The notes under the pieces are model-generated. The model was not told the origin of the DNA and ran no database searches. It saw only the letters and a program-made list of their open reading frames with translations. A DNA stretch of 21,518 bases, taken from NCBI RefSeq assembly GCF_006345805.1, contig NW_021823857.1, positions 1 to 21,518 of the forward strand. The letters run 5' to 3'. Shown piece after piece: positions 426 to 20,363 of the stretch (position 1 is its first letter; the number at the start of each line of letters is the position of its first letter). This DNA is from Octopus sinensis (lineage: Eukaryota). A program made the position numbers and the translations under genes.

Positions 426-497
426 AATTGTTTTAAATTTGAAAGCCCCGTGAATGTACCTTCATTGATGGTTGCAATGTTGTTGTTGTCAAGACGT
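426..497 (-). CDS. LRR exon E1 (72 nt): (L)RLDNNNIATINEGTFTGLSNLKQL
   Basis: Minus strand reads tttactctttctttactgctatag|ACGTCTTGAC...AAACAATT|gtaagt. Open, phase 2-2, matches the typical LRR consensus. Confidence 0.93.
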
Positions 498-2782: not shown

Positions 2783-2813
<31 letters not shown>

Positions 2814-5800
2814 ACGAAGAAGAAGACACATTGAAAATCATAGTGTTTAAGATGAAACTGAAAATATTTTCGAAATATCAGGAAATAATTCAAGGATAGA
2901 TCGATAAATCTTGGGCGAGAAACATGGCTGAAACATCAGGGAATATACGGAATCAGAAATCAACATATTCAAATGCACTCATACGCATTCTTATATTCAT
3001 AGTATCAACGACGGAATGCGGTATGCACACTCACATCACACATATTCCCACTCACCCTTGTGGAAATATGGTGAGAGAGATTATTTATTTCATATCGCTT
3101 CATTGTCACACAAGAATATTAGAAAACACACGCTTACAAGAATTATCACATTTTAATTGTATCAGCCAAATATTCCAGCTTACAAGTACAGTAAGTATTT
3201 CAGGTTTACAGATAGAATGTATGTGACGATATTATTCGAATATATATTTTCCGCTTCCACTTCAGTTGCTCTCTTACATAATAACGTGAAGTGAATGACA
3301 AAATTCGAAGTTGAATGATAATATCGAAACACGAAGGAGAATATTGAAATAAGAAATGGAGGAGGATGTAAAATATAAAATAAAGAAATAATATAGTCAC
3401 ATTTCACACAGAACTACACATATATATGAACATACACATATATTTCAGCTAAAAATATTTGATGCAAATATGTAAACTAACAAACATTACCATTTCTAAT
3501 ACAAATTCATATCAAAAACATTGAAATTTGGGGAACAAAAATGAGTTATTGAGATGCGAATTGAAACAAAGCAACTACAATAAAGGAACATTATATTTTT
3601 CCTATTATTTCACTTTCTCTCTCAATCTCTCTCTTTCTTTCACATTGTCTCGCTCTCTCCTATTCTCTTTGTATCTTCCTAAATCGTGTTCGATCCTCAA
3701 ATTTGAATTAATTTTGTTTCGTTCAGTCTGAAATTTTATACATTTGTGAGCTTATATATCAGCATCAATTATTACTTTCGGATAATAGTATCAAGAAACT
3801 GAACGAACTTACAATTCTTTTAATTTGAAAGCCCCCGTGAATGCTCCTTCTTTGATGGTTGTCTATGTTTTTGTTGTAACCAGATATCTATAGTAGCAGT
3901 AAGAAAAGAGTAAGTTAGATTATATGGAAAATATGATGTTTACGACATCAAACGCTGTACTTTCAGAATGAAAGGAAGAAAAAGAAGAAAGATAACGAAG
4001 AAGAAAAGGAAGAATAAGAAGGAGGAGGAGGAGGAGGCAAGAAGTGAAAAGAAGAAGAATAGTAGAAGAAGAAAGGAAAGAAGGAGAAAAAAAAGAAGGA
4101 AGAAGTAATAGGAGGACAAAAAAAAGGAGGAGGAGATGGTAAAAGGGAAGAAGTAGTAGCGGAAAAGTAAAAGAAGAAGAAGGAGGAGAGGAATGAGAGG
4201 ATGCAAGTAAATGAAGAAGTAGAAAGAAGAAGAAGAAGAAGAAGGAAGAGGAGAAAAAGGGGAGGAGGAGAATGATGGAGAATAAGTAGGAGAAGATGAA
4301 AAGAAGATGAATGAAGGATGAGGAGGATAAGAATAACAAAAAGAAGAATATAAGAATAAGAAAGAGGAGTAGGAGGAGAAGTAAATGTTGAAGTAGAAAG
4401 TTTGTAGAAGAAGAAGAAGAAGATTGAGAATAGTATAAGAAGAAAAATAGTAGAAAATGAGAAGAAAAAAGAAAAAGGAGAAGGAGAAAAGAACAAGAAG
4501 AAGAATTCGAGATAAGACTCAGAAGAAGAAGAAAAATATTCTGATAGAGGGGAGGAGGAGAATTACCAAAAAAAATGAGGAGAAGGCGTAGAGTATTGGG
4601 AAGAAAGAATAAGAGAAAAATAATTAAAGAGGAAGAGGAAAAGGAGGATGAATCAATAATGGAAATTAGTAGTAAAGAAAAAGAAAGAATAATAAGAAGG
4701 AGGGTAGGAAGGGAAAGGGAATAAGAGAGGAGTAGTTGAAAAAGTTGAAAGTAAAGAGTTGAATGTAGGATAAGAAGAAGAAATAAGTGATAAGCGATCG
4801 AAGAAGAAAAGAATAATAGAAGGAGAAGCGATAGAAGAAGAAAAGAATAAGAGACGAAGAAGGAGAAGAGAATAAGAAGAAGAAGAAGAAAATGAAAAAC
4901 GAGCAGGAAGAGGAGGGGAGGAGTAGAATTTACAAAGGAAAAATGGAGGAGGGGCGAGTGGAGGTAAGAAATTTAAAGAAGAAATGAAGAATAAGAAGAA
5001 GAAGAAATTAGAAGAGGAAGAGTAGGACGGAGTAGAAGAAGAAGAAAAAGAAAAGAAGAAAAAGAAGAAGAAGAAAAAGAAGAAGAAGAAGAAAAAGAGA
5101 AAGAAAAAGAAGGATGAGAAGGAGCACGGAGGAGAGGAAGAGAAGAAGAAAATAAGAAGAGGGAGGAGAAAAGAAGAAGAGCAGAAGATACATTGAAATT
5201 ATGGCGTTCAAGATGAAACTGAAAATGTTCTTAAATTCAGGAAATAATTCAAGGATATCGATAAATTTTGGGCGAGGAGACATGGCTGAAAAATCAGGGA
5301 ATATACGGAATCAGAAATCAACATATTCAAATGCACTCATACACATTCTCATATTCATAGTATCAACGACGGAATCCGGTATGCACACTCACATCACACA
5401 TATTCCCACTCACCCTTGTGGAAATATGGTGAGAGAGATTATTTATTTCATATCGCTTCATTGTCACAAGAATATTAGAAAAAACACGCTCACAAGAAAT
5501 ATATCAGCAGTTTAATTGTATCAGGCGAAATATTGCAGCTTACAAGTACAGTAAGTATTTCAGGTTTACAGATAGAATGTATGTGACTATATTATTCGAA
5601 TATATATTTTCCGCTTCCACTTCAGTTGCTCTCTTACATATATAACGTGAAGTGAATGACAAAATTCGAAGTTGAATGATAATATCGAAACACGAAGGAG
5701 AATATTGAAATAAGAAATGGAGGAGGATGTAAAATATAAAATAAAGGAATGATATAGTCACATTTCACACAGAACTACACTTATATATGAACATACACAT

Positions 5801-8800
5801 ATACTTCAGCTAAAAATATTTGATGCAAACATGTAAACTCACAAACGTTACCATTTCTAATACAAATTCATATCAAAATCATTGAAATTTGGGGAACAAA
5901 ACTGAGTTATTGAGATGCAAATTGAAACAAAGCAACTACAATAAAGGAACATTATATTTTTCCTATTATTTCACTTTCTCTCTCAAATTCTCTCTCTTTC
6001 TTTCACATTGTCTCGCTCTCTCCTATTCTCTTTGTATCTTCCTAAATCGTGTTCGATCCTCAAATTTGAATTAATTTTGTTTCGTTCAGTCTGAAATTTT
6101 ATACATTTGTGAGCTTATATATCAGCATCAATTATTACTTTCGGATAATAGTATCAAGAAACTGAACGAACTTACAATTCTTTTAAATTTGAAAGCCCCA
6201 TGAATGCTCCTTCTTTGATGGTTGCTATGTTGTTGTAACCAAGATATCTATAGCAGTAAAGAAAGAGTAAATTAGATTATATGGAAAATATATGTGTTAC
6301 GACATCAAACGCTGTGACTTCAGAATGAAAGGAAGAAAAAGAAGAAAGATAACGAAGAAGAAAAGGAAGAATAAGAAGGAGGAGGAGGAGGAGGCGAAGA
6401 AGTAGAAAAAGAAGAAGAAGAATTAGTAGAAGAAGAAAGGAGAAGAAGGAGAAGAAAAAGAAGGGGAAGAAGTAATAGGAGGAAAAAGGAGGAGGAGGAT
6501 GGTAAAAGGGAAGAAGTAGTAGCGGAAAAAGTAAAAGAAGAAGAAGGAGGAGGAGAAGGAGGAGGATGACAAGTAAATGAAGAAGTAGAAAGAAGAAGAA
6601 GAAGAAGGAAGAGGAGGAAAAAGGAGGAGGAGGAGAATGATGGGGAAGAATAAGTAGGAGAAGATGAAAAGAAAGATATGAGAGAGGAGGGATGAGAATA
6701 ACCAAAAGAAGAATATAAAAGAAGAAAGAGGAGTAGGAGGAGAAAGTAAATTTTGAAGTAGAAAGTTGTAGAAGAAGAAGAAGAAGAAGGAGTAGAAGTA
6801 TAAGAAGAAAAAAGAGTAGAAAAATGAGAAGAAGAAAAGAAAAAGGAGAAGGAGGAAAAGAAGAAGAAAAAGATGCGGGAGAGGAGGGGGAGGAGGAGAA
6901 TTACAAGAAAAAAGGAGGAGGAAGGGCGGAGAGGATTGGGAAGAAAGAAAGGAGAGGAAAAAAGAAGTAGAAGAGGAAGAGGAAAAAGGAGGAGGAAGCA
7001 ATGAATTGGAAAAGTAGGAGTAGAAGAAAAAGAAGAAGAATAAGAGAAGGAGGAGGAGGATGAGAGGTTTAAAAGTTAAAGTAAAGAGGATGTAGGAGAA
7101 AGAATAGAAGAAATAAGTAGAAGCGATAGAAGAAGAAAAGAATAAGGAGAAGGAGAAGCGATAGAAAAAGAAGAATAAGAAGACGAAGAAGGATAAGAAG
7201 AAGAAGAAGAAGAAGAAATGAAAACGAGCAGGTAGATGAGGGAGTAGGAGAATTACAAGAGGAAATATGAGGAGGAGGCGCGGAGTGGAGGGGAAGAGAA
7301 TTTAAAGAAGAAAATGAATAATAGAAGAATAAGAAATTAGAAGAGAAGAATGTAGTAAGGAGTAGAATAAGAAGAAAAGAAATGAGAGAAAGAAGAGAGA
7401 AGAAGAAGAGAAAAGAAGAAAAAGAAGAGAAGAAAAAGAAGAAGGAAGAAGGAGCGCAGGAGGAGAGGAAGAAGAGAAGAAGAAGAAGAATAAGAAGTAG
7501 AAAAAAGAAGGAGAGATGGGAAGGAATAAGAAGTAGAGAAGAAGATTAGAAGAAGAAGAGAAGAAGATTAGGAGAAAAAGAAGAAGATAAGACGAAGAAG
7601 ATACATTGAAATTATGGCGTTCAGGTGAAACTGAAAATGTTCTTAAATATCAGAAATAATTCAAGGAGAGATCGATAAATTTTGGGCGAGAGACATGGCT
7701 GAAAAATCAGGAATATACGGAATCAGAAATCAACATATTCAAACGTACTCATTCGCATTCTTATATTCATAGTATCAACGACGGAATCCGGTATGCACAC
7801 TCACATCACACATATTCCCACTCACCCTTGGGTAAATAATGTGAGAGAGATTATTTATTTCATATCGCTTCATTGTCACAAGAATATTAGAAAACACACG
7901 CTTACAAGAAATATATCAGCAGTTTAATTGTATCAGGCCAAATATTGCAGCTTACAAGTACAGTAAGTATTTCAGGTTTACAGAAAGAATGTATGTGACT
8001 ATATTATTCGAATATATATTTTCCGCTTCCACTTCAGTTGCTCTATTACATAAATAACGTGAAGTGAATGACAAAATTCGAATTTGAATGATAATATCGA
8101 AACACGAAGGAGAATATTGAAATAAGAAATGGAGGAGGATGTAAAATATAAAATAAAGGAATAATATAGTCACATTTCACACAGAACTACACTTATATAT
8201 GAACATACACATATACTTCAGCTAAAAATATTTGATGCAAACATGTAAACTCACAAACGTTACCATTTCTAATACAAATTCATATCAAAATCATTGAAAT
8301 TTGGGGAACAAAATGAGTTATTGAGATGCGAATTGAAACAAAGCAACTACAATAAAGGAACATTATATTTTTCCTATTATTTCACTTTCTCTCTCAAATT
8401 CTCTCTCTTTCTTTCACATTGTCTCGCTCTCTCCTATTCTCTTTGTATCTTCCTAAATCTTGTTCATTCTACAAATTCGAATTGATTTTGTTTGGTTCAG
8501 TCTGAAATATTATACATTTGTGAGCTTATATATCAGCATCAATTATTACTTTCGGAAAATAGTATCAAGAAACTGAACGAACTTACAATCCCTTTAAATT
8601 TGAAAGCCCCGTGAATGTACCTTCTGTGATGGTTGCAATGTTGTGCTCGTACACATATCTATAGCAGTAAAGAAAGAGTAAAATAGATTATATGGAAAAT
8701 ATTTGTGATACAACATCAAACACTGTGACTTGAGAATGAAAGGAAGAAAAAGAAGAAAGATAACGAAGAAGAAAAGGAAGAAGAAGAAGGAAGAGGAGGA

Positions 8801-11800
8801 GGCGAAGAAGAATTAAAAGAAGAAAGGAGAAGAGGTAGAAGAAAAAGAAGAGCAAGAAGGAATAGGAGGATAAAGGAGGAGGAGGCTGATAAAAGGGAAG
8901 AAGATGTAGGAGAAACAGTAAAAGAAGGAGAAGGAGGGGGAGGAGGAGCAGGAAGAGAATAACAAGAAGAAGAAGATAAGAATAAGAAAGACGAGGAAGA
9001 AGTGGAGGAGAAGTAGATGAAGAAGTAGAAAGAAGAAAGGAGAAGAAGAAGAAGGAGAAGAAGAAGGAGAAGAAGAAGAAGAAGAAGAAGACGAAAAAGA
9101 AGGAGGATGAGGAGGGGGAGGGGAAGAAGAAGAATTGCAAGAAGAAGGAAGGGAAGAACAAGAAGAAGACGTAGAAGAATTTGAAGCAGGAAAAAGAAGA
9201 AGAAGATGAAGAAGAAGGAGGAGGAGGAGGAGGAGGAGAAGGAGAAAGAGAATAACAAAAACAGAAGTTAAGAAGGAGAAGGAGGAGGAGGAGAAGATGT
9301 AGAAGAAGAAGAAGAAGAAGAAGAAGGAAGAGGAGGAAAAAGGAGGAGGAGTAGGAGTATGAAGGGGGAGAATAAGTAGGAGAAGATGAAAAAGAAGAAG
9401 AAGATGAAGGAGGAGGAGGAGGAGGAGGAGAGGAGGAAAATAACAAAAAGAAGAATATAAGAAGAAGAAAGAGGGGTAGGAGGAGAAGTAGATAAAGAAG
9501 TAGAAAGAAGAAGAAGAATATAAGAAGAAAAAAAAGAAATAGAAGAATGAGAAGAAGAAAAGAAAAAGAAGGAGGAGGAGGAAAAGAAGAAGAAGAATTA
9601 GAAGAAGAAGAAGAAGAAGAAGAAGAAGAAGACGGAGAAGAAAAAGAAAAAAAAAGAAAAAGGAGCAGGAGAGGAGGGGGAGGAAGAGAATTACAAGAAG
9701 AAATAGGAGGAGAAGCGGAGTGGAGGGGGAAGAGAATTTAAAGAAGAAAATGAAGAATAATAATAAGAAAAAAATTAGAAGAGGAAGGAGGAGGAGGACC
9801 AGGAGGAGGAGGAGGACCAGGAGGAGGAGGAGAACCAGGAGGAGGAGGAGGACCAGGAGGAGGAGGAGGACCAGGAGGAGGAGGAGAAGGAGGTGAAATA
9901 GAAGAAAAAGAAAAGAAGAGAAGAAGAAGAGAAGTAGATGAAGTAGAAGTGGAAGAAAGAAAAGAAAAGAAGAAGAAGAAGAAGAAGAAGAAGAAGAGAA
10001 GGAGGAGGAGGCAGAAGACGAAATGACAAAAAGATGATGAAAAAGGCAGAGAAGGAGAAGTAGAATAAGAAAAAGAACAAAAAGAAGAAGAAGGAGAAGA
10101 AGAAGAAGAAGAAGAAGAAGAAGAAAAGAAAGAAGAAGAAGAGAAGAAGAGGAAGAGAAGAAGACGAAGAAGATACATTGAAAATTATGGCGTTCAAGAT
10201 GAAACTGAAAATGTTCTTAAATATCAGGAAATAATTCAAGATAGATCGATAAATTTTGGGCGAGGAGACACATGGCTGAAAAATCAGGGATATACGGAAT
10301 CAGAAATCACATATATTCAAATGCACTCATACACATTCTTATATTCATAGTATCAACGACGGAATGCGGTATGCACACTCACATCACACATATTCCCACT
10401 CACCCTTGGGAAATATGGTGAGAGAGATTATTTATTTCATATCGCTTCATTGTCCACAAGATATTAGAAAAAACAACGCTTACAAGAAATATATCAGCAG
10501 TTAATTGTATCAGGCCAAATATTCCAGCTTACAAGTACAGTAAGTATTTCAGGTTTACAGATAGAATGTATGTGACTATATTATTCGAATATATATTTTC
10601 TGCTTCCACTTCAGTTGCTCTCTTACATAAATAACGTGAAGTGAATGACAAATTCGAAGTTGAATGATAATATCGAAACACGAAGAGAATATTGAAATAG
10701 AAATGGAGGAGGATGTAAAATATAAAATAAAGAATGATATAGTCCACATTTCACACAGAACTACACTTATATATGAACATACACATATACTTCAGCTAAA
10801 AATATTTGATGCAAACATGTAACTAACAAACGTTACATTTCTAATACAAATTCATATCAAAATCATTGAAATTTGGGGAACAAAAATGAGTTATTTAGAT
10901 GCGAAGTGAATCAAAGCAACTACAATAAAGGAACATTATATTTTTCCTATTATTTCACTTTCTCCCTCAAATTCTCTCTCTTTCTTTCACATTGTCTCGC
11001 TCTCTCATATTCTCTTTGTATCTTCCTAAATCGTGTTCGATCCTCAAATTTGAATTAATTTTGTTTCGTTCAGTCTGAAATTTTATACATTTGTGAGCTT
11101 ATATATCAGCATCAATTATTACTTTCGGAAAATAGTATCAAGAAACTGAACGAACTTACAATTCTTTTAAATTCGAAAGCCCCGTAAATGCACCTTCATT
11201 GATGCTTGAAATGCTGTTGCCCGAAAGAGCTCTGTGGTAGTAAAGAAAGAGTAAAATAGATTATATGGAAAATATTTGTGATACGACATCAAACGCTGTG
11301 ACTTCAGAATGAAAGGAAGAAAAGGCAGAAAGATAACGAAGAAGAAAAGGAAGAAGAAGAAGGAGGAGGAGGAGGAGGCGAAGAAGCAGAAAAAGAAGAA
11401 GAAGAATTAGTAGAAGAAGAAAGGAGAAGAAGGAGAAGAAATAGAAAGGGAAGAAGTAATAGGAGGAAAAAGGAGGAGGAGGATGGTAAAAGGGAAGAAG
11501 TAGTAGCGGAAAAAGTTAAAGAAGAAGAAGGAGGAGGAGAAGGAGGAGGACGACAAGTAAATGAAGAAGTAGAAAGAAGAAGAAGAAGAAGAAGAAGGAA
11601 GAGGAGGAAAAAGGAGGAGGAGGAGAATGACGGGGAAGAATAAGTAGGAGAAGATGAAAAAGAAGATGATGATGAAGGAGGAGGAGGATGAGAATAACAA
11701 AAAGAAGAATATAAGAAGAAGAAAGAGGAGTAGGAGGAGAAGTAAATGTTGAAGTAGAAAGTTGTAGAAGAAGAAGAAGAAGAAGGAGAAGAAGTATAAG

Positions 11801-12501
11801 AAGAAAAAAAGAGTAGAAAAATGAGAAGAAGAAAAGAAAAAGGAGAAGGAGGAAAAGAAGAAGAAGAAGATTTAGAAGAAGACGCAGAAGAAGTAGAAAA
11901 AGATGCGGGAGAGGAGGGGGAGGAGGAGAATTACAAGAAAAAAAGGAGGAGGAGGGGCGGAGAGGATCGGGAAGAATGAAAGAAGAGGAAAAATGAAGTA
12001 GAATGGGAAGAGGAAAAAGGAGGAGGAAGCAATGAAGTGGAAAAGTAGGAGTATAAGAAAAAGAAGAAGAATAAGAAGAAGGAGGAGGAGGAGGAGGAGT
12101 AGTTGAAAAAGTTGAAAGTAGAAGAGGATGTAGGAGAAGAAGAAGAAGAAATAAGTAGAAGCGATAGAAGAAGAAAAAGAATAAGGAGAAGGAGAAGAAG
12201 AAGAAGAAGAAGACGAAGAAGGAGAAGAAGAAGAAGAAGAAGAAAATGAAAAACGAGCAGGAGAGGAGGGGAGGAGGAGAATTACAAGAGGAAAAATGAG
12301 GAGGAGGGGCGGAGTGGAGGGGGAAGAGAATTTAAAGAAGAAAATGAAGAATAAGAAGAAGAAAGAAATTAGAAGAGGAAGGAGTAGGAGGAGTAGAAGA
12401 AGAAGAAAAAGAAAAGAAGAGAAGAAGAAGAAGAAGAAGAAGGAAAAGAAGAAAAAGAAGAGAAGAAAAAGAAGGAGGAGAAGGAGCAGCAGGAGGAGAG
12501 G

Positions 12502-12533
<32 letters not shown>

Positions 12534-15500
12534 GAGGAAAAGAAGGAGGAGGAGAAGAAGAAGTAGAAGAAGAAGAAGAAGAAGAAGAAGCGGGAGGAGA
12601 AGAAGAAGAAGAAGACGAAGAAGATACATTGAAAATTATGGCGTTCAAGATGAAACTGAAAATGTTCTTAAATATCATAAATAATTCAAGATAGATCGAT
12701 AAATTTTGGGCGAGGAGACATGGCTGAAAAATCAGGGAATATACGGAATCAGAAATCACATATTCAATGCACTCATACACATTCTCATATTCATAGTATC
12801 AACGACGGAATGCGGTATGCACACTCACATCACACATATTCCCACTCACCCTTGTGGACATATGGTGAAGAGATTTTTATTTCATATCGCTTCATTGTCA
12901 CAAGAATATTAGAAAACAACACGCTTACAAGAAATATATCAGCATTTAATTGTTCAGGCGAAATATTCCAGCTTACAAGTACAGTAAGTATTTCAGGTTT
13001 ACAGAAAGAATGTATGTGACTATATTATTCGAATATATATTTTCCTTTCCGCTTCCACTTCAGTTTGCTCTCTTACATAAATAACGTGAAGTGAATGACA
13101 AAATTCGAAGTTGATGATAATATCGAAACACGAAGGAGAATATTGAAATAAGAAATGGAGGAGGATGTAAAATATAAAATAAAGGAATGATATAGTCACA
13201 TTTCACACAGAACTACACTTATATTGAACATACACATATACTTCAGCTAAAATATTTGATGCAAACATGTAAACTCACAAACGTTACCATTTCTAATACA
13301 AATTCATATCAAATCATTGAAATTTGGGAACAAAACTGAGTTATTGAGATGCGAATTGAAACAAAGCAACTACAATAAAGGAACATTATATTTTTCCTAT
13401 TATTTCACTTTCTCTCTCAAATTCTCTCTCTTTCTTTCACATTGTCTCGCTCTCTCCTATTCTCTTTGTATCTTCCTAAATCGTGTTCGATCCTCAAATT
13501 TGAATTAATTTTGTTTCGTTCAGTCTGAAATTTTATACATTTGTGAGCTTATATATCAGCATCAATTATTACTTTCGGATAATAGTATCAAGAAACTGAA
13601 CGAACTTACAATTCTTTTAAATTTGAAAGCCCCGTGAATGCTCCTTCTTTGATGGTTGCTATGTTGTTGTAACCAAGATATCTATAGCAGTAAAGAAAGA
13701 GTAAATTAGATTATATGGAAAATATATGTGTTACGACATCAAACGCTGTGACTTCAGAATGAAAGGAAGAAAAAGAAGAAAGATAACGAAGAAGAAAAGG
13801 AAGAATAAGAAGGAGGAGGAGGAGGAGGCGAAGAAGTAGAAAAAGAAGAAGAAGAATTAGTAGAAGAAGAAAGGAGAAGAAGGAGAAGAAAAAGAAGGGA
13901 AGAAGTAATAGGAGGAAAAAGGAGGAGGAGGATGGTAAAAGGGAAGAAGTAGTAGCGGAAAAAGTAAAAGAAGAAGAAGGAGGAGGAGGAGGATGACAAG
14001 TAAATGAAGAAGTAGAAAGAAGAAGAAGAAGAAGAAGGAAGAGGAGGAAAAGGAGGAGGAGGAGAATGATGGGGAAGAATAAGTAGAGAAGATGAAAAAG
14101 AAGAAATGATGAGAATAACAAAAGAAGAAATATAAGAAGAGAAGAGAGGAGGTAGGAGGAAAGTAAATGTTGAAGTAGAAAGTAGTAGAAGAAGAGAAGA
14201 AGAAGAAGAGAAGAAGTAATAATAGAAAAAAAGAGTAGAAAAATGAGAATAAGAAAAGAAAAAGGAGAAGGAGGAAAAGAAACAAGAAGAAGATTTTAAG
14301 AAGACGCAGAATAAGAAGAAAAGATGCGGGAGAGGATGGGGAGAGATAATTACAATAAAAAAGGATGAGGAAGTGCGGAGGATTGGAAGAAAGAAGAAGA
14401 GGAAAAAAGAAGTAGAAGAGGAAGAGGAAAAAGGAGGAGGAAGCAATGAAGTGGAAAAGTAGGAGTAGAAGAAAAAGAAGAAGAATAAGAAGAAGGAGGA
14501 GGAGGAGGAGGAGTAGTTGAAAAAGTTGAAAGTAGAAGAGGATGTAGGAGAAGAAGAAGAAGAAATAAGTAGAAGCGATAGAAGAAGAAAAAGAATAAGG
14601 AGAAGGAGAAGCGATAGAAGAAGAAAAGAAGAAGAAGAAGACGAAGAAGGAGAAGAGAAGAAGAAGAAGAAGAAGTAGAAGAAAATGAAAAACGAGCAGG
14701 AAGAGGAGGGAGAGGAGAATTACAAGAGAAAAATGATGAGAGGGCGGAGTGGAGGGGGAAGAGAATTTAAAGAAGAAAATGAGAATAATAAGAAGAAAGA
14801 ATTAGAAGGGGAGAGGAGCATGAGAGTAGAAGAAGAAGAAAAGAAATGAAGAGAAGAAGAAGAAGAAGAAGAAGGAAAAGAAGAAAAAGAAGAGAAGAAA
14901 AAGAAGGAGGAGAAGGAGCAGCAGGAGGAGAGGAAGAAGAAGAAGAAGAACAAGAGGTAGAAGAAGAAGTAGAGGAAGAAGAAGGAGGAGAAGAAGTAGT
15001 AGAAGAAGAAGAAGAAGAAGATGGAGGAGAAGAAGAAGAAGAAGACGAAGAAGATACATTGAAAATTATGGCGTTCAAGGTGAAACTGAAAATGTTCTTA
15101 AAATATCAGGAAATAATTCAAGGAGAGATCGATAAATTTTGGGCGAGGAGACATGGCTGAAAAATCAGGGAATATACGGAATCAGAAATCAACATATTCA
15201 AACGCACTCATTCGCATTCTTATATTCATAGTATCAACGACGGAATGCGGTATGCACACTCACATCACACATATTCCCACTCACCCATGTGGACATATGG
15301 TGAGAGAGATTATTTATTTCATATCGCTTCATTGTCACAAGAATATTAGAAAACACACGCTTACAAGAAATATATCAGCAGTTTAATTGTATCAGGCCAA
15401 ATATCCCAGCTTACAAGTACAGTAAGTATTTCAGGTTTACAGATAGAATGTATGTGACTATATTTTTTGAATATATATTTTCCGCTTCCACTTCAGTTGC

Positions 15501-18500
15501 TCTATTACATAAATAACGTGAAGTGAATGATAAAATTTGAAATTGTTTGATAATATCGAAACACGAAGGAGAATATTGAAATAAGAAATGGAGGAAGATG
15601 CAAAAAATAAAATAAAGGAATAATAGTCACATATCACACAGAACTACACTTATATATGAACATACACATATACTTCAGCTAAAAATATTTGATGCAAACA
15701 TGTAAACTCACACACGTTACCATTTCTAATACAAATTCATATCAAAATCATTGAAATTTGTGGAACAAAAATGAGTTATTGAGATGCAAATTGAAACAAA
15801 GCAACTACAATAAAGGAACATTATATTTTTCCTATTATTTCACTTTCTCCCTCAAATTCTCTCTCTTTCTTTCACATTGTCTCGCTCTCTCATATTCTCT
15901 TTGTATATTCCTAAATCGTGTTCATTCTACAAATTTGAATTGATTTTGTTTAGTTCAGTGTGAAATATTATACAATTGTGAGCTTATATATCAGCATCAA
16001 TTATTACTTTCGGAAAATAGTCTCAAGAAACTGAACGAACTTAAAATTCTTTTAAATTTGAAAGCCCCGTAAATGCACCTTCTGTGATGGTTGCAATGTT
16101 GTTCTCGTTCAGATATCTATAGCAGTAAAGAAAGAGTAAAATAGATTATATGGAAAACATTTGTGATACAACATCAAACACTGTGACTTGAGAATGAGGA
16201 AGAAAAAAGAAGAAAGATAACGAAGAAGAAAGGAAGAAAGATAGAGCGAAGTAGAGTGAGGCGAAGAAGAATTAGAAGAAGAAAGGAGAAGAGGTAGAAG
16301 AAAAAGAAGAGCAGAAGGAATAGAGGAAAAAGGAGGAGAGGCTGATAAAGGGAGAGAGATGTAGGAGAAAAAGTAAAAGAAGGAGACGGAGGGGTGAGGG
16401 AGGAGAGGAGAGGAATAGAATAACAAGAAGAAGAATATAACGAATAAGAAAGACGAGGAAGAGTAGAGGAGAAGTACATGAGAAGTAGAAAAAGAAAGAG
16501 AAGAAGAAGGTGAATGAAGAAGTAGAAGAAGATGAAGAAGATGACGAAAAATAAGGAGGATGAGTGAGGGGGTAGTGAATAAGAAGAATTGCAAGAAGAA
16601 GGAAGGAAGAACAGGAAAGAAGACGAGAGTTGAAGCATGGAAAAGAAGAAAAAATGAAGAAGAAGGAAGGAGATAAAGATAGAGAATACAAAAACAGTAG
16701 TTAAGAAAGAAGAGGTGAGGAAGGATTGTAGAAGAAGAAGAAGAAGAATGAAGAGGAATAAGAAGAAGATAGAAGAAGAAAATCAGAAATAACGATAACT
16801 AAGAAAAAAGAAGACAGAAGAAGAAGAGAACCGAAGGAGAAGAAAATAAGGCAGGAGGATAAGAATATCTTAACGTGGCAGCCGTTTCATGTTATTTCCT
16901 ACTTCTTGCACAACCTCGAGTATCCGCATCGCCTCTCTATGTACCACCACACACATCCACACACATACACGCACATGTATGCACATAAAGCACATACACA
17001 CATATCACTCAGAATATACACACATATGTCTACTACCTCTGGGTGCGAGTATGTGTGTGAACCTCGTCCCCGTAGTGGTGTCCTTTTATCTGTCGATACA
17101 GTTTATTATCGAATCTAAGGTGTTGTCTTCTAGTTCCCGGCGTGTGTCTTTGGAAATGCGTTTTGAAGCGTTCGTCCATCCGTCCGCTATGTTTTTTCTA
17201 CCCAGTGTTTTGATTGCTCCCAGGCCCAAGTGTGATGTATTTGTAGAAGATTAGTCAAATCTTTTAAGTATAGTACGTTCTGGGACAGTGGGTGGAATGT
17301 GTTTGATGAATCCATATCGTCTCGGGTATAGCTGGGCATTAATGGGCACAACGGTTTGAGGAGTATATCTCAAGATGGCTCATTTGTTGTGTTGGGGCTC
17401 AAGGTCCATCAACTGTTGGTCTCAATTTGATGTCAGTAGGTCTTTAGTATTTTTTATATGCTGATCCTTGCATTTTGGAGCATTCGCAGATCTTGGGTGA
17501 TCCATCCATAAAATTACTCTCTTTCATTACAGAGCTGCATAAATAATCGTTCTCTCTTTATCTGTGAACGACGAACGTTGGTATTCATTTATCTTATTTT
17601 GGGTGTATTCATTATTACATTTTCTCCGCGTGTCTTGGTTCTTCCTTGTAGCAGGATTAGTCTGTTTTCCAATATTTTATCTTTATAGTAGTCTTGGGTC
17701 CGTGACTGCTATCGCCCTTCCCAATCGGTTTCGTTTAGGATGATTAAATTGTCAATTTGCAGTTTGTAAGGCTTTCTTTTCGTCTTCACGAAGGTTCTGT
17801 TTGCATTTTCGCATTTTCGATTATTTTATTATAATAGATATAAACAGATTTAAGTCACACGTAAAGTATGAATGGAAAACACACATGCATGTAAAATATG
17901 AGAAAAGAATGGATGTTCAAATATTGTGATTTGAATTAGATTTACAAAGCCTTCGTTGCAACATCAGTTTTCAGTGGAAGATATTTTTTATCATCTCATA
18001 AGTCAGCTTTATTTATAAATATCTTGTTTCTGTCCAATGAGCATTCTATTTGTTATTACACTTTGCTGTCAAAAGTAATTTATCTTTGCAAAAGTAAACT
18101 CCTTTCCTTTGCATAATTGATGCATAAAAGTTCTTTACAAAAATAAATAAACCCCCAAAACCTCAAGACTGAAATAATAGACTAGGAAGGAAAACATAAC
18201 AGAAATGGAAAGGGATTTATTAATAGAACTGGTGATGGTAGAGTGGGGAAACCCTGATATAATTTTGAGTTATGTACTACAAAGGAGAACAACCTTACAT
18301 GGTGATTTAACTGGCTAAGGGTGTTATTTAAAAAAGGGATGTGACAACATACATTGCCTTAGTTTTTTAGTCTTTGTTTAGCCCTTTGCTCCTTACTCTT
18401 GCTGTATTAAACCTCAGTTTGTTCCCATTATTAACTACCTATGCTAAATCCTTCATCTCCTGAAGAGTATCCCTGTTCATCATTTCTGTAAAGGTTGACC

Positions 18501-20363
18501 TGCAACAGCTCAAGCGGAATATTAATGATATCTGTCTCACAAGTATTGGAGATCTTGCAGGGGTTAAAAAACTTGTCTGATCCTTTCTCCAAAATCGGTA
18601 AAATAAAAAGTGTGGGATTTTAACTCATATCACAACACCGGACAATATACTGCAAGGTGTCTTATTCGAGGTCCTCATAGTTGCATTTGTTCATTGAACT
18701 GTTATGGTTCTTTATTGATCTCGGAAATGAATGACCCAAGGTTGACCTTGCGGGATTTGACGTCAGATTGCCGTGTGTCAGAACGCAATGTATTCTACTA
18801 GACGGTCAAATGATTTGTGCCTACCTCGCTCAAGTTATGAACGATGAAAATATCTAACTTATTAAACAGAACTTCAACTTTACTATTCAACATCTTGAGT
18901 TATACGAGATTTAGGGATTCCATTATTGACACTTTCTCTTTATTTTACATTAGGATTTCTCATTTTGTCAAAACGTTCCAAATGTTTTGAGAAATAGATC
19001 TGATCGAATGAATTGATCCACTTTAGTATTAGAATATTTGATTAAACTGAAAGTTTAAGGATTAAATGCAATGATGCAAGCCAATTAACTGGAAAAATCA
19101 CCTGGAAGAGCAATGTGTTGCAACAGAGTATTTGTTATGATTGCATGTATCAAAATAATTTTCTCTTTTTATTCTATCCATTTCTTGAGACGTTAAATTT
19201 TAATAATTTACTTAAAATTGCGTAAGATTTCAGGTGAACGGGGATACATCAATCAGCCGAAACTTCAATTAAGCTTGCATAATTTTGTAATAAGGTTTAT
19301 TGTGTTCATGATAGGGTAAATTTTACTGATGACATTCTATCAAAAATAAATTCCTCATAATTTGTTAAAATAACACTATTTTTTGATTTCTTCACTTAGG
19401 TATTTTAAGAATTTGGCAATTTAAGCGGATCTCGTCATTATCTGCTGTTTAATTCATCTGTTTCATTTTTAATTATAAAAATAATAATTTCTTCTATAGG
19501 AACAAACCTGAAATTTTGGGAAAGGGACAAGTCCTTTACATTGATCTCAGAGATAAATTGCTGTTTATTTACCGACTCCAAAAGAATGAAAAGCAAAGTC
19601 AACCTCGACAGAATTTAAATCGAAACGTAAAGACGAACGATAACCGCTCAACATTTTGTCTGCGTGCACAACGATTCTGATAGCTCGCTGCATATTCTAT
19701 TATAAAATTAACACAAACAATAATTAACATTATTCTGTGACACGGACGATCAACTGATATTATATCATATTACTGTAACAATAAGTAACAATTCAACTAA
19801 TTATGATATAATATCTAACTGTTGGAATACACGTTTTCTTAGCACTAAAGTTTTTATACTGTCCGTTCATTGAATATACCGTAAAGATTGATAAGTTCAG
19901 ACAAATGAAATCAAAGTCAGATACTAGTCATAGCCAATCTCTGTGTATGCGATGTTATATATTATAAATTCAATATGGTAAGTAACAGTTTATTTGACTT
20001 CACAGCAGGTAACATATCGATTTGTTTTACTCTAACATAAGATTGTGCTTAAAGCTGTGAGATAAACAGCATAAGCGATTAGCTGAGAACATAATCAATG
20101 AGAATTTAAAATATTGGATGTGGAAAATACGTAGAAAGTGGTCAAATACTTACAAATATTCACATTCGTCGGAATTGTTTGGGAAATCGATGGTAAATTG
20201 CGATGTTCACAATCTATATTTGTTGTAAGTGAATTGCAAGTACATATCTTGCATATATCTGAATCAGCTTGAGTCTCCAAAAACAATATCGTACACAGTA
20301 TCAACGCAAGAGACCGTCTATATGATACTACGTGTGAACATATTGCCAGGCGTGATTTATTAT
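426..20363 (-). CDS. Multi-exon secreted/membrane LRR protein gene, 5' portion (signal peptide + LRRNT + at least 7 single-LRR exons; continues beyond the left edge)
   Basis: Hand-assembled from one LRRNT exon and seven LRR exons, all on the minus strand with AG/GT boundaries except where noted. One 72-nt phase-2 exon per LRR is the established architecture of extracellular LRR genes such as LGR/RXFP and Slit. Linking the LRRNT exon to the array is inference. Confidence 0.8.
565..2824 (+). repeat. Purine-rich (GAA/GGA)n spacer S1, longest, with nested internal duplications
   Basis: Direct inspection; overwhelmingly A/G on the plus strand. Confidence 0.95.
3813..3887 (-). pseudogene. LRR exon E2, frameshifted as written (75 nt; underlying YLGYNNIATIKEGAFTGLSNLKEL type)
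   Basis: AG/GT intact. Several small indels versus E6 give A TAT CTG GTT ACA ACA AAA ACA TAG (stop). Could be assembly error or true decay. Confidence 0.7.
3965..5186 (+). repeat. Purine-rich spacer S2
   Basis: GAA/GGA-rich; shares landmarks (atggtaaaaggg, aagtaaatg, gcgat, aaaaacgagcagg) with S3, S5 and S6. Confidence 0.95.
6176..6247 (-). CDS. LRR exon E3 (72 nt): (L)YLGYNNIATIKEGAFMGLSNLKEL
   Basis: ctatag|ATATCTTGGTTAC...AAAGAATT|gtaagt; open, phase 2-2. Confidence 0.93.
6325..7599 (+). repeat. Purine-rich spacer S3
   Basis: Same landmarks as S2, S5 and S6. Confidence 0.95.
8587..8658 (-). CDS. LRR exon E4 (72 nt): (L)YVYEHNIATITEGTFTGLSNLKGL
   Basis: ctatag|ATATGTGTACGAG...AAGGGATT|gtaagt; open, phase 2-2. 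The ladder Asn is replaced by His. Confidence 0.88.
8735..10171 (+). repeat. Purine-rich spacer S4, containing an 18-nt (GGA)5CCA-like minisatellite at ~9787-9886
   Basis: Left half shares gctgataaa, gatgtagg and aaaaacag(a/t)agttaag with S7. Confidence 0.95.
11160..11231 (-). CDS. LRR exon E5 (72 nt): (L)ALSGNSISSINEGAFTGLSNLKEL
   Basis: ctaccacag|AGCTCTTTCGGGC...AAAGAATT|gtaagt; open, phase 2-2. Most divergent exon. Confidence 0.93.
11305..12622 (+). repeat. Purine-rich spacer S5
   Basis: Same landmarks as S2, S3 and S6. Confidence 0.95.
13610..13681 (-). CDS. LRR exon E6 (72 nt): (L)YLGYNNIATIKEGAFTGLSNLKEL
   Basis: ctatag|ATATCTTGGTTAC...AAAGAATT|gtaagt; open, phase 2-2. One nt different from E3. 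Confidence 0.93.
13760..15052 (+). repeat. Purine-rich spacer S6
   Basis: Same landmarks as S2, S3 and S5. Confidence 0.95.
16045..16116 (-). CDS. LRR exon E7 (72 nt): (L)YLNENNIATITEGAFTGLSNLKEL; donor mutated GT>TT
   Basis: Acceptor and frame are intact. The plus strand has cttaaaatt where other copies have cttacaat(t/c), so the minus-strand donor reads ttaagt. Confidence 0.75.
16190..16865 (+). repeat. Degenerate, truncated spacer S7 marking the array edge
   Basis: S4-like but more interrupted; ends abruptly in unique sequence. Confidence 0.9.
16940..17030 (+). repeat. Degenerate (CA)n/(TA)n microsatellite
   Basis: cacacacatccacacacatacacgcacatgtatgcac... Confidence 0.7.
17035..17815 (-). 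mobile_element. Decayed Penelope-like retroelement RT fragment
   Basis: Minus-strand pieces, frameshifted: QNLREDEKKALQ (17761-17799), KLRPTVDGP*APTQQMSHL, DILLKPLCPLMPSYTRDDMD, FDNKLYRQIKG (17081-17113). They match Penelope-type RT motifs (NLTxEExxAL, LRPIVS, YxQxxG) recalled from memory. Confidence 0.75.
18330..18600 (-). mobile_element. Possible decayed Ty3/Gypsy RT fragment
   Basis: Minus-strand frame FWRKDQTSFLTP...RSTFTEMMNRDTLQEMKDLA* resembles the Gypsy KTAFxTP...PxTFQRxMN motif. Heavily degenerate. Confidence 0.4.
19471..19692 (-). mobile_element. Degenerate tRNA-derived SINE resembling an abundant Octopus repeat
   Basis: Minus strand starts gcagcgagctatcagaatcgtt (A-box-like) and contains gatttaaattct (B-box-like). 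It has an ATT-rich tail. The body (gaatgaaaagcaaagtcaacctcgacagaattt) was recognised from memory, not by search. Confidence 0.65.
20154..20363 (-). CDS. Signal peptide + LRR N-terminal cap exon (210 nt): ...RRSLALILCTILFLETQADSDICKICTCNSLTTNIDCEHRNLPSISQTIPTNVNI
   Basis: ttttcttcttttacag acceptor, gtaagt donor, open frame. Hydrophobic stretch ending in TQA, followed by a CxxCxC...C...L....IP LRRNT pattern. Confidence 0.85.

What the first reader, a model, noticed from the sequence alone, without database searches (positions are those of the whole stretch)
11041..13681. Exons diverge far more than their flanking introns, mostly at concave-face positions
Seen: E5 versus E6 differ at 15/72 exon nt, whereas the adjacent ~120 nt on the donor side (from 11041 and from 13491) differ at one site. 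E1 versus E6 differ at 10/72, five of them in the first 13 nt. Variable residues are exon positions 1 (Y/A/R), 3 (N/G/S/Y/D), 4 (E/Y/G/N), 11 (T/K/N) and 23 (E/G/Q). I7, I10, E12, G13, F15 and GLSNLK are invariant. Known: the x positions of LxxLxLxxN line the ligand-binding concave sheet and are hypervariable in VLRs and plant LRR receptors. Inference: diversifying selection, or intron homogenisation that spares selected exon differences.
Basis: partly seen in the sequence, partly recalled or inferred. Interest (0 to 1): 0.8.

Follow-up and report, generated by a model that had tools for sequence, protein, structure and literature searches.

The report
Octopus LRR exon array, hypervariable binding face
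The window holds part of an octopus gene built from tandem 2.4-kb units, each carrying one 72-base leucine-rich-repeat exon; four codons that line or border the binding face differ about ten times more between units than the introns do, a sign of selection for diversity in a repeat array whose non-coding parts keep being homogenised.

Summary
The window's minus strand carries an octopus (Octopus vulgaris/sinensis group) gene: a signal-peptide/LRRNT exon, a 4-kb intron, and seven tandem units. Each unit has one 72-nt phase-symmetric LRR exon plus about 1 kb of unique intron and a 1.2-2.2 kb (TTC)n tract.

Exons differ by 10-26% where the unique introns differ by 3-7%. E5/E6 is 15/72 against 1/119 in the donor flank.

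The excess sits in exon nt 2-13 and 67-70, that is codons 1, 3, 4 and 23. These are the x positions of LxxLxLxxN. They are contiguous in the mRNA but 2.4 kb apart in the DNA.

The same pattern recurs in ten independent O. sinensis exons of this type and in a second exon type.

My own site models give ω of 4.5-16 at codons 1, 3 and 4, with codon 23 weaker. Position 11 is not supported.

Synonymous sites of this exon type are also about 3x more diverse than the introns. Intron and exon distances are uncorrelated, introns cluster by locus, and at least 29 recombination events are needed.

Best reading: diversifying selection on the concave face acting together with gene-conversion homogenisation. 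This is a known kind of evolution in a seemingly undescribed octopus cassette-exon family. Frameshifts in this copy are probably assembly errors.

The parts
20154..20363 (-). First coding exon. The ATG is at 20341. It encodes the signal peptide and the LRRNT cap (...SLALILCTILFLETQADSDICKICTCNSLTTNIDCEHRNLPSISQTIPTNV.EYL). As assembled it lacks 2 nt after ATGTTC and 1 nt in AATG-TGAATATTT, which puts it out of frame.
   Evidence: It aligns to exon 1 of four O. sinensis paralogues (MFHHVVSYRRSLVLILCTILFLETQADSDICKICTCNSL...).
16117..20153 (-). Intron 1. It is collinear with four O. sinensis paralogous loci at 3.7-6.0% substitution divergence. Its 3' end holds a (TTC)n tract (+ strand 16199-16780).
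16045..16116 (-). Its donor is TTAAGT instead of GTAAGT.
13610..13681 (-). LRR cassette exon U6 (E6), encoding YLGYNNIATIKEGAFTGLSNLKE.
11160..11231 (-). LRR cassette exon U5 (E5), encoding ALSGNSISSINEGAFTGLSNLKE. It is the most divergent exon. Three further differences lie in the last 7 nt of its acceptor-side intron.
8587..8658 (-). LRR cassette exon U4 (E4), encoding YVYEHNIATITEGTFTGLSNLKG.
6176..6247 (-). LRR cassette exon U3 (E3), encoding YLGYNNIATIKEGAFMGLSNLKE. It differs from U6 at one nucleotide.
3813..3887 (-). LRR cassette exon U2 (E2). It is of the U3/U6 type but is 75 nt long, with several 1-2-nt indels and an in-frame TAG. It is either a dead cassette or an assembly error.
   Evidence: with the window's indel excess shown.
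426..497 (-). LRR cassette exon U1 (E1), encoding RLDNNNIATINEGTFTGLSNLKQ. The array runs off the left edge of the window.
12625..13609 (-). Unique donor-side intron segment of unit U6, about 1 kb. Equivalent segments lie at about 15055-16044, 10174-11159, 7602-8586, 5189-6175, 2827-3812 and 1-425. Mean pairwise diversity among cassettes is 0.057.
13682..13765 (-). Unique acceptor-side intron segment of U6, about 85-110 nt, ending ...CTCTTTCTTTACTGCTATAG. It is nearly invariant in all cassettes of both assemblies.
13766..15054 (-). Imperfect (TTC)n tract on the gene strand ((GAA)n on +), upstream of exon U6. Equivalent tracts lie at 582-2826, 3975-5188, 6332-7601, 8743-10173, 11338-12624 and 16199-16780.
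   Evidence: The same architecture is seen in O. sinensis locus L005.

Best explanation
This is part of a gene of an octopus-lineage family of extracellular LRR proteins. The family layout is signal peptide, LRRNT, a variable number of 24-residue LRRs, LRRCT and a Cys-rich module.

Each LRR is one 72-nt exon that starts and ends in the same codon phase (TT|A = Leu). Each exon sits in a tandemly duplicated cassette made of the exon, about 1 kb of unique intron, and a 0.3-2.2 kb (TTC)n tract.

The cassettes and the gene copies keep exchanging sequence by unequal crossing-over and gene conversion. That holds all unselected sequence (introns, upstream region, signal peptide) at about 4-6% divergence.

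Selection favours repeats that differ at codon 23 of one exon and codons 1, 3 and 4 of the next. These are the x positions of LxxLxLxxN: codons 23 and 1 flank the buried Leu in the strand of the concave sheet, and codons 3 and 4 follow it. Selection both fixes new replacements there and rejects conversions that would erase the differences. The outcome is a sharp, codon-periodic divergence peak inside each exon, flanked by homogenised introns.

Shown: the anatomy, the excess divergence and its position, ω above 1 at codons 1, 3 and 4, the mosaic history, and replication in a second assembly and a second exon type.

Inferred: the exchange mechanism, the ligand-binding role of the concave face, and the biological function (recognition, whether immune or neural or adhesive, is unknown).
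For: Gene and family:
- Best protein hits are O. sinensis proteins with the same signal peptide, LRRNT and LRRs.
- The 4.8-kb 5' part is collinear with four paralogous loci at 3.7-6.0%.
- The LRRNT/LRR/LRRCT fold is modelled with pLDDT above 90 in the LRR part. Nearest structures are Nogo receptor, LGR4 and hagfish VLR.

Excess divergence:
- Exon against intron, all pairs.
- Intron diversity is 0.057. Exon nt 1-13 gives 0.44 and nt 67-72 gives 0.34.
- Codons 1, 3, 4 and 23 reach 7-13x the intron value.
- The pattern recurs in ten O. sinensis A-type exons and eight B-type exons.

Selection:
- pN at the hypervariable codons is 0.54-0.58, against an intron value of 0.04-0.06. pN/pS is 1.6 and 2.9.
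- M2a beats M1a with P of 5e-6, 9e-3, 4e-6 and 1e-6. ω2 is 4.5-16 on codons 1, 3 and 4.
- Invariant Leu and Asn codons alternate with hypervariable codons. A conversion tract could not by itself produce that pattern.
- The pair S1a/S5c has introns 3.6% apart, 0/60 framework differences and 3/12 hypervariable differences.

Homogenisation:
- A-type framework third positions are 0.169 against 0.057 for introns, P=0.0004.
- Mantel r between intron and exon distance is 0.03 and -0.08.
- Introns cluster by locus; exons do not.
- 38% of informative site pairs fail the four-gamete test, Rm is at least 29, and neighbouring sites are less incompatible than permuted ones, P=0.002.

Literature for the same logic: L/M opsins (PMC3213168), the divergence-peak theory (PMC3924837) and a plant R-gene cluster (PMC3113787).
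Against: - The site models are my own implementation. They use a fixed exon NJ tree with one global scale factor, and only 24 codons.
- Recombination is known to inflate such likelihood-ratio tests.
- pS inside the hypervariable codons rests on 2-3 synonymous sites.
- In the B type, framework synonymous diversity is not significantly above the intron value (0.073 vs 0.043, P=0.14). There, homogenisation beyond simple recent duplication is not demonstrated.
- Divergence drops abruptly at the exon borders with no decay into the intron. A simple linked-site effect of conversion plus selection would predict a gradient. Splice-signal constraint near the borders may hide one.
- Many synonymous changes lie next to variable first positions. 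This could reflect multinucleotide mutation or micro-conversion.
- Mosaicism could be partly produced by short-read polishing of repeats.
- No raw reads, population data or orthologous arrays were available.
- The window copy carries frameshifts and a broken donor, so it may not be functional.
Confidence: 0.6

Rival explanations
1. Pure positive selection after a recent burst of cassette and gene duplications. The introns are simply young and neutral, no ongoing homogenisation is needed, and all exon excess is newly fixed replacement.
For: Non-coding divergence is much the same everywhere. It is 3.5-6% between gene copies and 0.057 between cassettes. B-type framework synonymous diversity is not above the intron value. 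S1a/S5c differ only at hypervariable codons. ω2 is well above 1.
Against: A-type framework third positions are 3x the intron value, P=0.0004. Exon and intron distances are uncorrelated. Exon and intron trees are discordant. Rm is at least 29, with 38% of site pairs incompatible. The implied ω relative to introns, above 10, is unusually high.
Confidence: 0.2
2. Old exons with homogenised introns and no positive selection. The LRR exons are ancient paralogous repeats whose x positions are merely unconstrained. Conversion erases divergence everywhere except where purifying selection rejects converted exons.
For: Exon synonymous divergence is above the intron value in the A type. The history is mosaic. 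Opsin genes give a precedent (PMC3213168).
Against: pN exceeds pS at the hypervariable codons in both exon types. M2a is favoured with ω2 of 4.5-16. If the x positions were neutral, nothing would protect them from conversion. The framework of S1a/S5c is identical while the hypervariable codons differ.
Confidence: 0.08
3. The introns evolve more slowly than neutral because they carry function, for example splicing-regulatory elements for cassette choice. On this view the exon/intron contrast overstates the exon acceleration.
For: The first 100-330 nt on either side of the exons are the most conserved parts. B-type donor-side diversity is 0.00-0.03. The acceptor-proximal 30 nt is nearly invariant. 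Intron homology is still 81% overall, about 83% outside the exon by eye, in a distant O. vulgaris relative whose exon differs at 22/72 by my count of the alignment. Annotated isoforms suggest regulated cassette skipping.
Against: Intron 1 and the upstream region are equally similar between paralogues. The whole 1-kb segment is about 5% diverged with no obvious blocks. No Rfam family or tRNA was found. This does not explain pN above pS within the exons.
Confidence: 0.08
4. Assembly or sequencing artefact: the exon differences, or the intron similarity, come from consensus or polishing errors in a repeat array.
For: The window has 77 private small indels in 4.8 kb, against 1-14 in each O. sinensis locus. 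It also has frameshifts in exon 1 and U2. Repeat arrays are hard to assemble: four of the five O. sinensis gene loci fetched end at a contig end.
Against: Private substitutions in the window are not in excess: 89, against 35-94. The same codon-specific pattern appears in a different assembly and in a second exon type. Errors would not respect codon positions or keep Leu and Asn codons intact.
Confidence: 0.02
5. A targeted mutational process, such as templated micro-conversion from other family members or a deaminase-type hypermutation focused on the exon ends, creates the variability. Selection would only filter the result.
For: Hypervariable di-residue modules (NE, YE, RG, GY, SG) recur in cassettes that differ at codons 1 and 23. 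Four-gamete breaks fall inside the 72-nt exon. Synonymous changes cluster next to variable sites.
Against: The variable nucleotides lie 2.4 kb apart in the DNA but are contiguous in the protein. Invariant codons are interleaved with hypervariable ones. No transition or deaminase bias was seen (κ is about 1). No donor cassettes were identified.
Confidence: 0.02

Closest known systems
Divergence peaks in duplicated genes under gene conversion plus selection (primate L/M opsins; Teshima and Innan model)
   Same: Exons diverge significantly more than the flanking introns. Intron trees and exon trees disagree. Conversion acts mostly in the introns, and selection preserves differences at a few functional codons (PMC3213168, PMC3924837). 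Here.
   Different: Here the units are repeated exons of a single gene, and of its paralogues, rather than two genes. The selected sites number four per repeat and show ω above 1, so new diversity is favoured rather than one fixed difference being kept. The peak is only 12 plus 4 nt wide.
Plant resistance-gene LRR clusters (positive selection on solvent-exposed xxLxLxx residues with sequence exchange between paralogues)
   Same: Hypervariable x positions of the LRR β-strand, gene conversion between paralogues and birth-and-death dynamics (PMC3113787). Here.
   Different: This is an animal extracellular 24-residue LRR with LRRNT and LRRCT caps. There is one repeat per exon with kb-size introns, whereas plant LRR domains are mostly encoded in long exons. 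No link to pathogens has been shown.
Variable lymphocyte receptors of lampreys and hagfish
   Same: The same domain order (LRRNT, 24-residue LRRs, LRRCT) and hypervariable concave-face residues. Hagfish VLR-A (2o6q) is among the best structural matches. The cassette logic is similar.
   Different: By my knowledge, VLR diversity is assembled somatically from intron-less flanking cassettes by a cytidine-deaminase-dependent copy-choice process. Here the cassettes are ordinary spliced exons in the germline gene, and no somatic process has been shown.
LGR4/5/6 and glycoprotein-hormone receptor genes (one LRR per ~72-nt exon)
   Same: The exon-per-repeat architecture (my knowledge). LGR4 and LGR5 ectodomains are among the closest sequence and structure matches.
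   Different: By my knowledge, LGR exons are old, conserved and not tandemly homogenised. They show no hypervariability, and their introns are unrelated to one another.
Octopus-specific adhesion-GPCR expansion (group 3 of Ritschard et al. 2019)
   Same: A recent octopus-lineage expansion, LRRs in some members, and signs of positive selection (PMC6408891). Larger relatives of this family share the LRRCT and Cys-rich module, and one is named 'adhesion GPCR G6-like'.
   Different: The window shows no GPS or 7TM region, because the 3' end lies outside it. Full-length members such as P0241 end after the Cys-rich module. Identity with that group was not tested.

Membership tests
Extracellular 'typical' LRR proteins with LRRNT and LRRCT caps (the Slit/NgR/LGR/LINGO/VLR structural class) | Tandem 24-residue repeats that fit LxxLxLxxNxIxxIxxxxFxxLxxL | tested here: met
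   All seven window exons fit, with U2 fitting after allowing for indels. Pfam LRR_8 scores E=3e-95 on the relative P0121.
Extracellular 'typical' LRR proteins with LRRNT and LRRCT caps (the Slit/NgR/LGR/LINGO/VLR structural class) | An N-terminal Cys-rich cap (CxxCxC...C) after a signal peptide | tested here: met
   Window exon 1 encodes ...LFLETQA/DSDICKICTCNSLTTNIDCEHRNLPSI. The Pfam LRRNT match on P0121 is weak (E=0.005, below the curated cut-off). The region aligns to caps of solved structures.
Extracellular 'typical' LRR proteins with LRRNT and LRRCT caps (the Slit/NgR/LGR/LINGO/VLR structural class) | A C-terminal cap (LRRCT, CxC...) | tested here: inconclusive
   It is not in the window, because the array runs off the edge. 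Family members carry it (NNLMKCGCHLPAFVKY aligns to the IGFALS cap).
Extracellular 'typical' LRR proteins with LRRNT and LRRCT caps (the Slit/NgR/LGR/LINGO/VLR structural class) | A curved solenoid with one short β-strand per repeat forming the concave sheet | tested here: met
   The AF2 model of P0121 has strands every 24 residues (63-65, 87-89...) with pLDDT above 90 in the LRR part. Foldseek gives TM to target of 0.7 for Nogo receptor and VLR.
Duplicates evolving under gene conversion with selection for divergence (Teshima-Innan divergence peak) | Divergence is high at a small target and low in the flanks | tested here: met
Duplicates evolving under gene conversion with selection for divergence (Teshima-Innan divergence peak) | Independent evidence of sequence exchange between copies | tested here: met
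   Rm is at least 29, a PHI-like test gives P=0.002, and introns cluster by locus. Caveat: polishing artefacts are possible and no GENECONV run was made.
Duplicates evolving under gene conversion with selection for divergence (Teshima-Innan divergence peak) | Neutral sites linked to the target are older than the flanks | tested here: inconclusive
   A-type third positions are 0.169 against 0.057, P=0.0004. The B type is not significant. No gradient into the introns is seen.
Variable lymphocyte receptors (VLR) | An incomplete germline gene completed somatically from flanking intron-less LRR cassettes | tested here: not met
   The cassettes here are internal exons with AG/GT splice sites, in frame with exon 1.
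Variable lymphocyte receptors (VLR) | Hypervariable concave-face residues in the LRRs | tested here: met
Mutually exclusive exon arrays (Dscam1 type) | Exactly one exon of a cluster is included per transcript | tested here: not met
   Annotated O. sinensis isoforms include 5-8 cassettes each and differ by whole 24-residue steps. This is cassette skipping, not mutual exclusion. The evidence is at annotation level only.
Octopus adhesion-GPCR expansion (Ritschard 2019, group 3) | A GPS/GAIN motif and an adhesion-type 7TM domain | not testable with these tools
   The 3' end of the gene is outside the window. The relatives fetched show no 7TM region, and Pfam finds nothing in P0144. One of them is merely named adhesion GPCR-like.

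The most novel reading that the evidence does not exclude
The arrays may be a germline-encoded combinatorial recognition repertoire. Every 72-nt cassette is phase-symmetric, so any subset can be spliced together in frame. Each cassette is preceded by a kb-scale (UUC)n polypyrimidine tract that could govern its inclusion. Its concave-face codons are driven apart by selection.

One O. sinensis gene is already annotated with 13 isoforms that differ by whole cassettes. If cells choose cassettes variably, octopuses would build many different LRR binding surfaces from a few genes. That would be a splicing-based analogue of lamprey VLR assembly or insect Dscam diversity, used either in immunity or in neural and sucker surface recognition.
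Probability: 0.2. Interest if true: 0.85.

Novelty: new variant of a known kind. Interest (0 to 1): 0.6.

Why it matters
Cephalopods have no described diversified recognition receptors apart from expanded protocadherins and GPCRs. This finding points to a young, fast-expanding octopus family of capped LRR proteins. Its ligand-facing residues evolve roughly ten times faster than neutral sequence.

Its gene architecture seems built for repeat turnover and possibly for cassette choice: single-repeat exons, homogenised introns and (TTC)n tracts. It is also a clean natural example of selection and gene conversion leaving opposite marks only a few bases apart. The selected nucleotides are adjacent in the protein but 2.4 kb apart in the DNA, which separates a protein-level cause from a mutational one.

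There is a practical warning too. These arrays break assemblies and gene models: four of the five O. sinensis gene loci fetched stop at a contig end. The family is therefore probably under-counted.

Tried and rejected
- Look-ups of P0001, P0002 and P0121 found no recorded gene because they are not the longest isoforms. P0241 worked.
- The O. vulgaris locus L006 turned out to be a distant relative, not an orthologue. No cross-species orthologous-cassette test was therefore possible.
- My first third-position test had an indexing error. An apparent high-diversity intron block was misaligned (TTC)n. Both were corrected.
- The first codon-model run crashed on the B type and was rerun.
- Whole-exon dN/dS is below 1 for most pairs. 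Only the partitioned and site-class analyses show ω above 1.
- Pfam finds no domain in the C-terminal Cys-rich part.
- No Rfam family and no tRNA or SINE-like gene explains the intron conservation. Cassette-intron sequence occurs only at cassettes, not in the 10-kb upstream flanks of the other loci, so a dispersed transposon is unlikely.
- Literature searches found no description of this family or of an octopus LRR diversification system.
- A simple three-unit higher-order duplication (U7-U6-U5 copied to U4-U3-U2) was rejected. The three pairs have unequal intron distances of 3.7%, 1.5% and 5.6%.

Full report
**What is in the window**

The + strand shows a roughly 2.4-kb periodicity with long (GAA)n-rich stretches. 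On the minus strand, each period holds one 72-nt open exon bounded by ...CTATAG| and |GTAAGT. Each exon encodes one 24-residue leucine-rich repeat.

There are seven units. In + coordinates they are U1 426-497, U2 3813-3887, U3 6176-6247, U4 8587-8658, U5 11160-11231, U6 13610-13681 and U7 16045-16116. Every exon begins with the third base of a split Leu codon (TT|A) and ends with TT. Any exon can therefore follow any other in frame.

Upstream in the gene direction, at 20154-20363, lies an exon for a signal peptide and a Cys-rich LRRNT cap. The array continues beyond the left edge of the window.

**Source and family**

The best protein matches are predicted Octopus sinensis proteins. They share the same signal peptide (MFHHVVSYRRSLVLILCTILFLETQA), the same LRRNT and near-identical LRRs.

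Full-length members add an LRRCT cap and a Cys-rich module. Larger relatives carry extra extracellular modules, and one is named adhesion-GPCR-like. Pfam recognises only the LRRs.

I fetched five O. sinensis loci (L001-L005). The window's 4.8-kb 5' part is collinear with L001-L004, the four aligned. It lies 3.7-6.0% from them by substitutions, and they lie 3.5-5.2% from each other. The window is therefore another paralogue from the same species group.

The window has 77 private small indels in that stretch, against 1-14 in each O. sinensis locus, yet its count of private substitutions is ordinary. The deletions that put exon 1 out of frame and the indels in U2 are therefore most likely assembly errors. 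The U7 donor GT-to-TT change is a substitution and may be real. A dead cassette also exists in O. sinensis: S4a has an AA acceptor and a TAA stop.

**Check of the observation**

- E5/E6 differ at 15/72 and E1/E6 at 10/72.
- There is one difference in the 119-nt donor flanks, at 11130.
- The listed variable and invariant residues are right.

Across all 21 pairs, exons differ by 10-26% and the roughly 1,070 alignable intron positions by 2.7-7.5%. The exception is the recent pair U3/U6.

I aligned 16 independent intact exons of this 'A' type with their introns, six from the window and ten from O. sinensis. Intron diversity is 0.057 in this set and in the earlier 12-exon set. In the 12-exon set, exon nt 1-13 reach 0.44 and nt 67-72 reach 0.34, against 0.089 for nt 14-66. 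No block of the donor-side unique intron of equal length comes close.

Codons 1, 3, 4 and 23 reach 7-13 times the intron value, and each exceeds every adjacent intron triplet.

A second exon type is absent from the window but alternates with A in O. sinensis. This 'B' type (NKISRIEKEMFQGLHNLE) shows the same picture at the same codons.

**Where the variable codons sit**

In LRR terms the repeat reads L21-x22-x23-L0-x1-L2-x3-x4-N5. The variable codons are therefore x3, x5, x7 and x8 of LxxLxLxxN.

An AlphaFold model of the relative P0121 has pLDDT above 90 in the LRR part. It places a three-residue strand every 24 residues, made of codon 23, the buried Leu and codon 1. Codons 3 and 4 follow directly. 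The nearest solved folds are Nogo receptor, LGR4 and hagfish VLR.

The variable nucleotides are the last few of one exon and the first dozen of the next. They are contiguous in the mRNA but separated by a 2.4-kb intron in the DNA, and they are interleaved with invariant Leu and Asn codons. This argues for a cause at the protein level rather than a local mutational hotspot or a conversion-tract boundary.

**Selection or homogenisation?**

Whole-exon dN/dS is mostly below 1, and exon dS (0.13-0.49) itself far exceeds intron divergence. I therefore partitioned the codons.

| Partition | pN | pS | pN/pS |
|---|---|---|---|
| A type, codons 1, 3, 4, 23 | 0.58 | 0.35 | 1.6 |
| B type, codons 1, 3, 4, 23 | 0.54 | 0.19 | 2.9 |

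The remaining codons have pN of 0.063 (A) and 0.043 (B), close to the intron values, with pN/pS of 0.33 and 0.48.

My own maximum-likelihood site models use an exon NJ tree with one global scale factor and F3x4 codon frequencies. They favour M2a over M1a in every set.

| Data set | LRT | P | ω2 |
|---|---|---|---|
| A type, 16 exons | 24.5 | 5e-6 | 4.5 |
| Window only, 6 exons | 9.4 | 0.009 | 8.6 |
| B type, 8 exons | 24.9 | 4e-6 | 16 |
| O. sinensis A type only, 10 exons | 27.4 | 1e-6 | 15 |

Posteriors are at least 0.95 for codons 1, 3 and 4, except that the O. sinensis A-only set supports only codons 3 and 4. Codon 23 reaches 0.84 in the pooled set. Codon 11 stays at about 0. It is unresolved for position 23, and position 11 is not supported.

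Four results show that the introns do not simply share the exons' history:
- A-type framework third positions are three times as diverse as the introns (0.169 vs 0.057, P=0.0004).
- Intron and exon distances are uncorrelated (Mantel r=0.03 and -0.08).
- Introns cluster by locus, whereas exon types are shared across loci.
- 38% of informative site pairs fail the four-gamete test. At least 29 exchange events are needed, and the incompatibilities show spatial structure (P=0.002).

Recurrent hypervariable modules (NE, YE, RG, GY, SG) in otherwise different cassettes point the same way.

Sequence exchange keeps unselected DNA at about 5% divergence. Selection for different concave faces both fixes replacements and resists homogenisation.

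**Caveats**
- The alignments are short, and recombination inflates likelihood-ratio tests.
- The B type shows no significant synonymous excess.
- The step at the exon borders is abrupt.
- Polishing of repeats could mimic mosaicism.
- No reads, populations or true orthologues were available. L006 from O. vulgaris is only a distant relative.

**Comparison with known systems**

The logic matches three known cases. The first is the divergence peak of duplicated genes under conversion plus selection (L/M opsins, PMC3213168; review PMC3924837). The second is positive selection on solvent-exposed LRR residues with paralogue exchange in plant R-gene clusters (PMC3113787). The third is the hypervariable concave face of VLRs.

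It is not a VLR, because the cassettes are ordinary spliced exons. It is not a Dscam-type mutually exclusive array, because annotated isoforms carry 5-8 cassettes.

An octopus-specific adhesion-GPCR expansion with LRRs and positive selection has been reported (PMC6408891). A link is possible but untested.

I found no description of this family or of its architecture.

**Other features seen**

Every cassette in both assemblies is preceded by an imperfect (TTC)n tract of 0.26-2.2 kb. One O. sinensis gene has 13 RefSeq isoforms of 409, 385, 361 and 337 residues, which are steps of exactly one cassette. Some of these models look chimeric, so this is only a lead. It allows the reading that cassette choice by splicing adds combinatorial diversity.

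**Verdict**

The phenomenon is of a known evolutionary kind, found in a new and apparently undescribed octopus gene architecture.

Noticed in passing
window 582-2826, 3975-5188, 6332-7601, 8743-10173, 11338-12624, 13766-15054, 16199-16780; L005 twelve tracts between 6469 and 29059: Every LRR cassette exon, of A and B type and in both assemblies, is preceded on the gene strand by an imperfect (TTC)n tract of 0.26-2.2 kb. It could promote unequal exchange, or it could act as a giant polypyrimidine tract in splicing. Neither idea was tested.
   Followed up: partly
window 20154-20363 (exon 1) and 3813-3887 (U2): Exon 1 lacks 2 nt after ATGTTC and 1 nt before the donor, compared with four paralogues. 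U2 has about five small indels and a stop. The window carries 77 private small indels in 4.8 kb, against 1-14 in each related locus, so these are probably assembly errors rather than a pseudogene.
   Followed up: yes
window 16043-16044 (donor of U7); L004 about 13720-13800 (cassette S4a): There are dead cassettes inside arrays. The U7 donor is TT instead of GT. O. sinensis S4a has an AA acceptor and an in-frame TAA. Because all cassettes are phase-symmetric, skipping them keeps the reading frame.
   Followed up: partly
L005 (O. sinensis contig VCDQ01004985.1), proteins P0241, P0121, P0232-P0243: One gene has 13 annotated isoforms of 409, 385, 361 and 337 residues, which are steps of exactly 24 residues or one LRR cassette. 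The variable usage lies among the 5' cassettes. Some models contain chimeric repeats and may be mapping artefacts.
   Followed up: partly
L001-L004 (O. sinensis): All four of these gene models stop at a contig end inside a cassette array. The family is therefore truncated and probably under-counted in that assembly. L001 is an allelic or haplotig copy of the start of L005, with introns 0.4-1.1% apart.
   Followed up: yes
window 20154-20260 (mature LRRNT part of exon 1): The LRRNT cap also evolves fast between paralogues (pN 0.10-0.15, pS 0.09-0.13, non-coding 0.035-0.06). The signal-peptide codons are conserved (pN 0.013).
   Followed up: yes
window 426-16116 compared with L005 7066-27676: The window has seven A-type cassettes in a row and no B-type (NKISRIEKEMFQGLHNLE) cassette. 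The complete O. sinensis gene largely alternates A and B types. Array composition therefore differs strongly between paralogues.
   Followed up: partly
window 634-1251: Inside the longest (GAA)n tract there is a 274-nt higher-order tandem repeat (2.3 copies, 90% matches).
   Followed up: no
L006 15210-15638 (O. vulgaris chromosome OX597843.1): A more distant family member still has recognisable A-type intron sequence: 81% identity over the whole 430-nt match, about 83% outside the exon by eye. Its exon differs at 22/72 by my count of the alignment. It shows the same exon-above-intron trend at greater evolutionary distance.
   Followed up: partly
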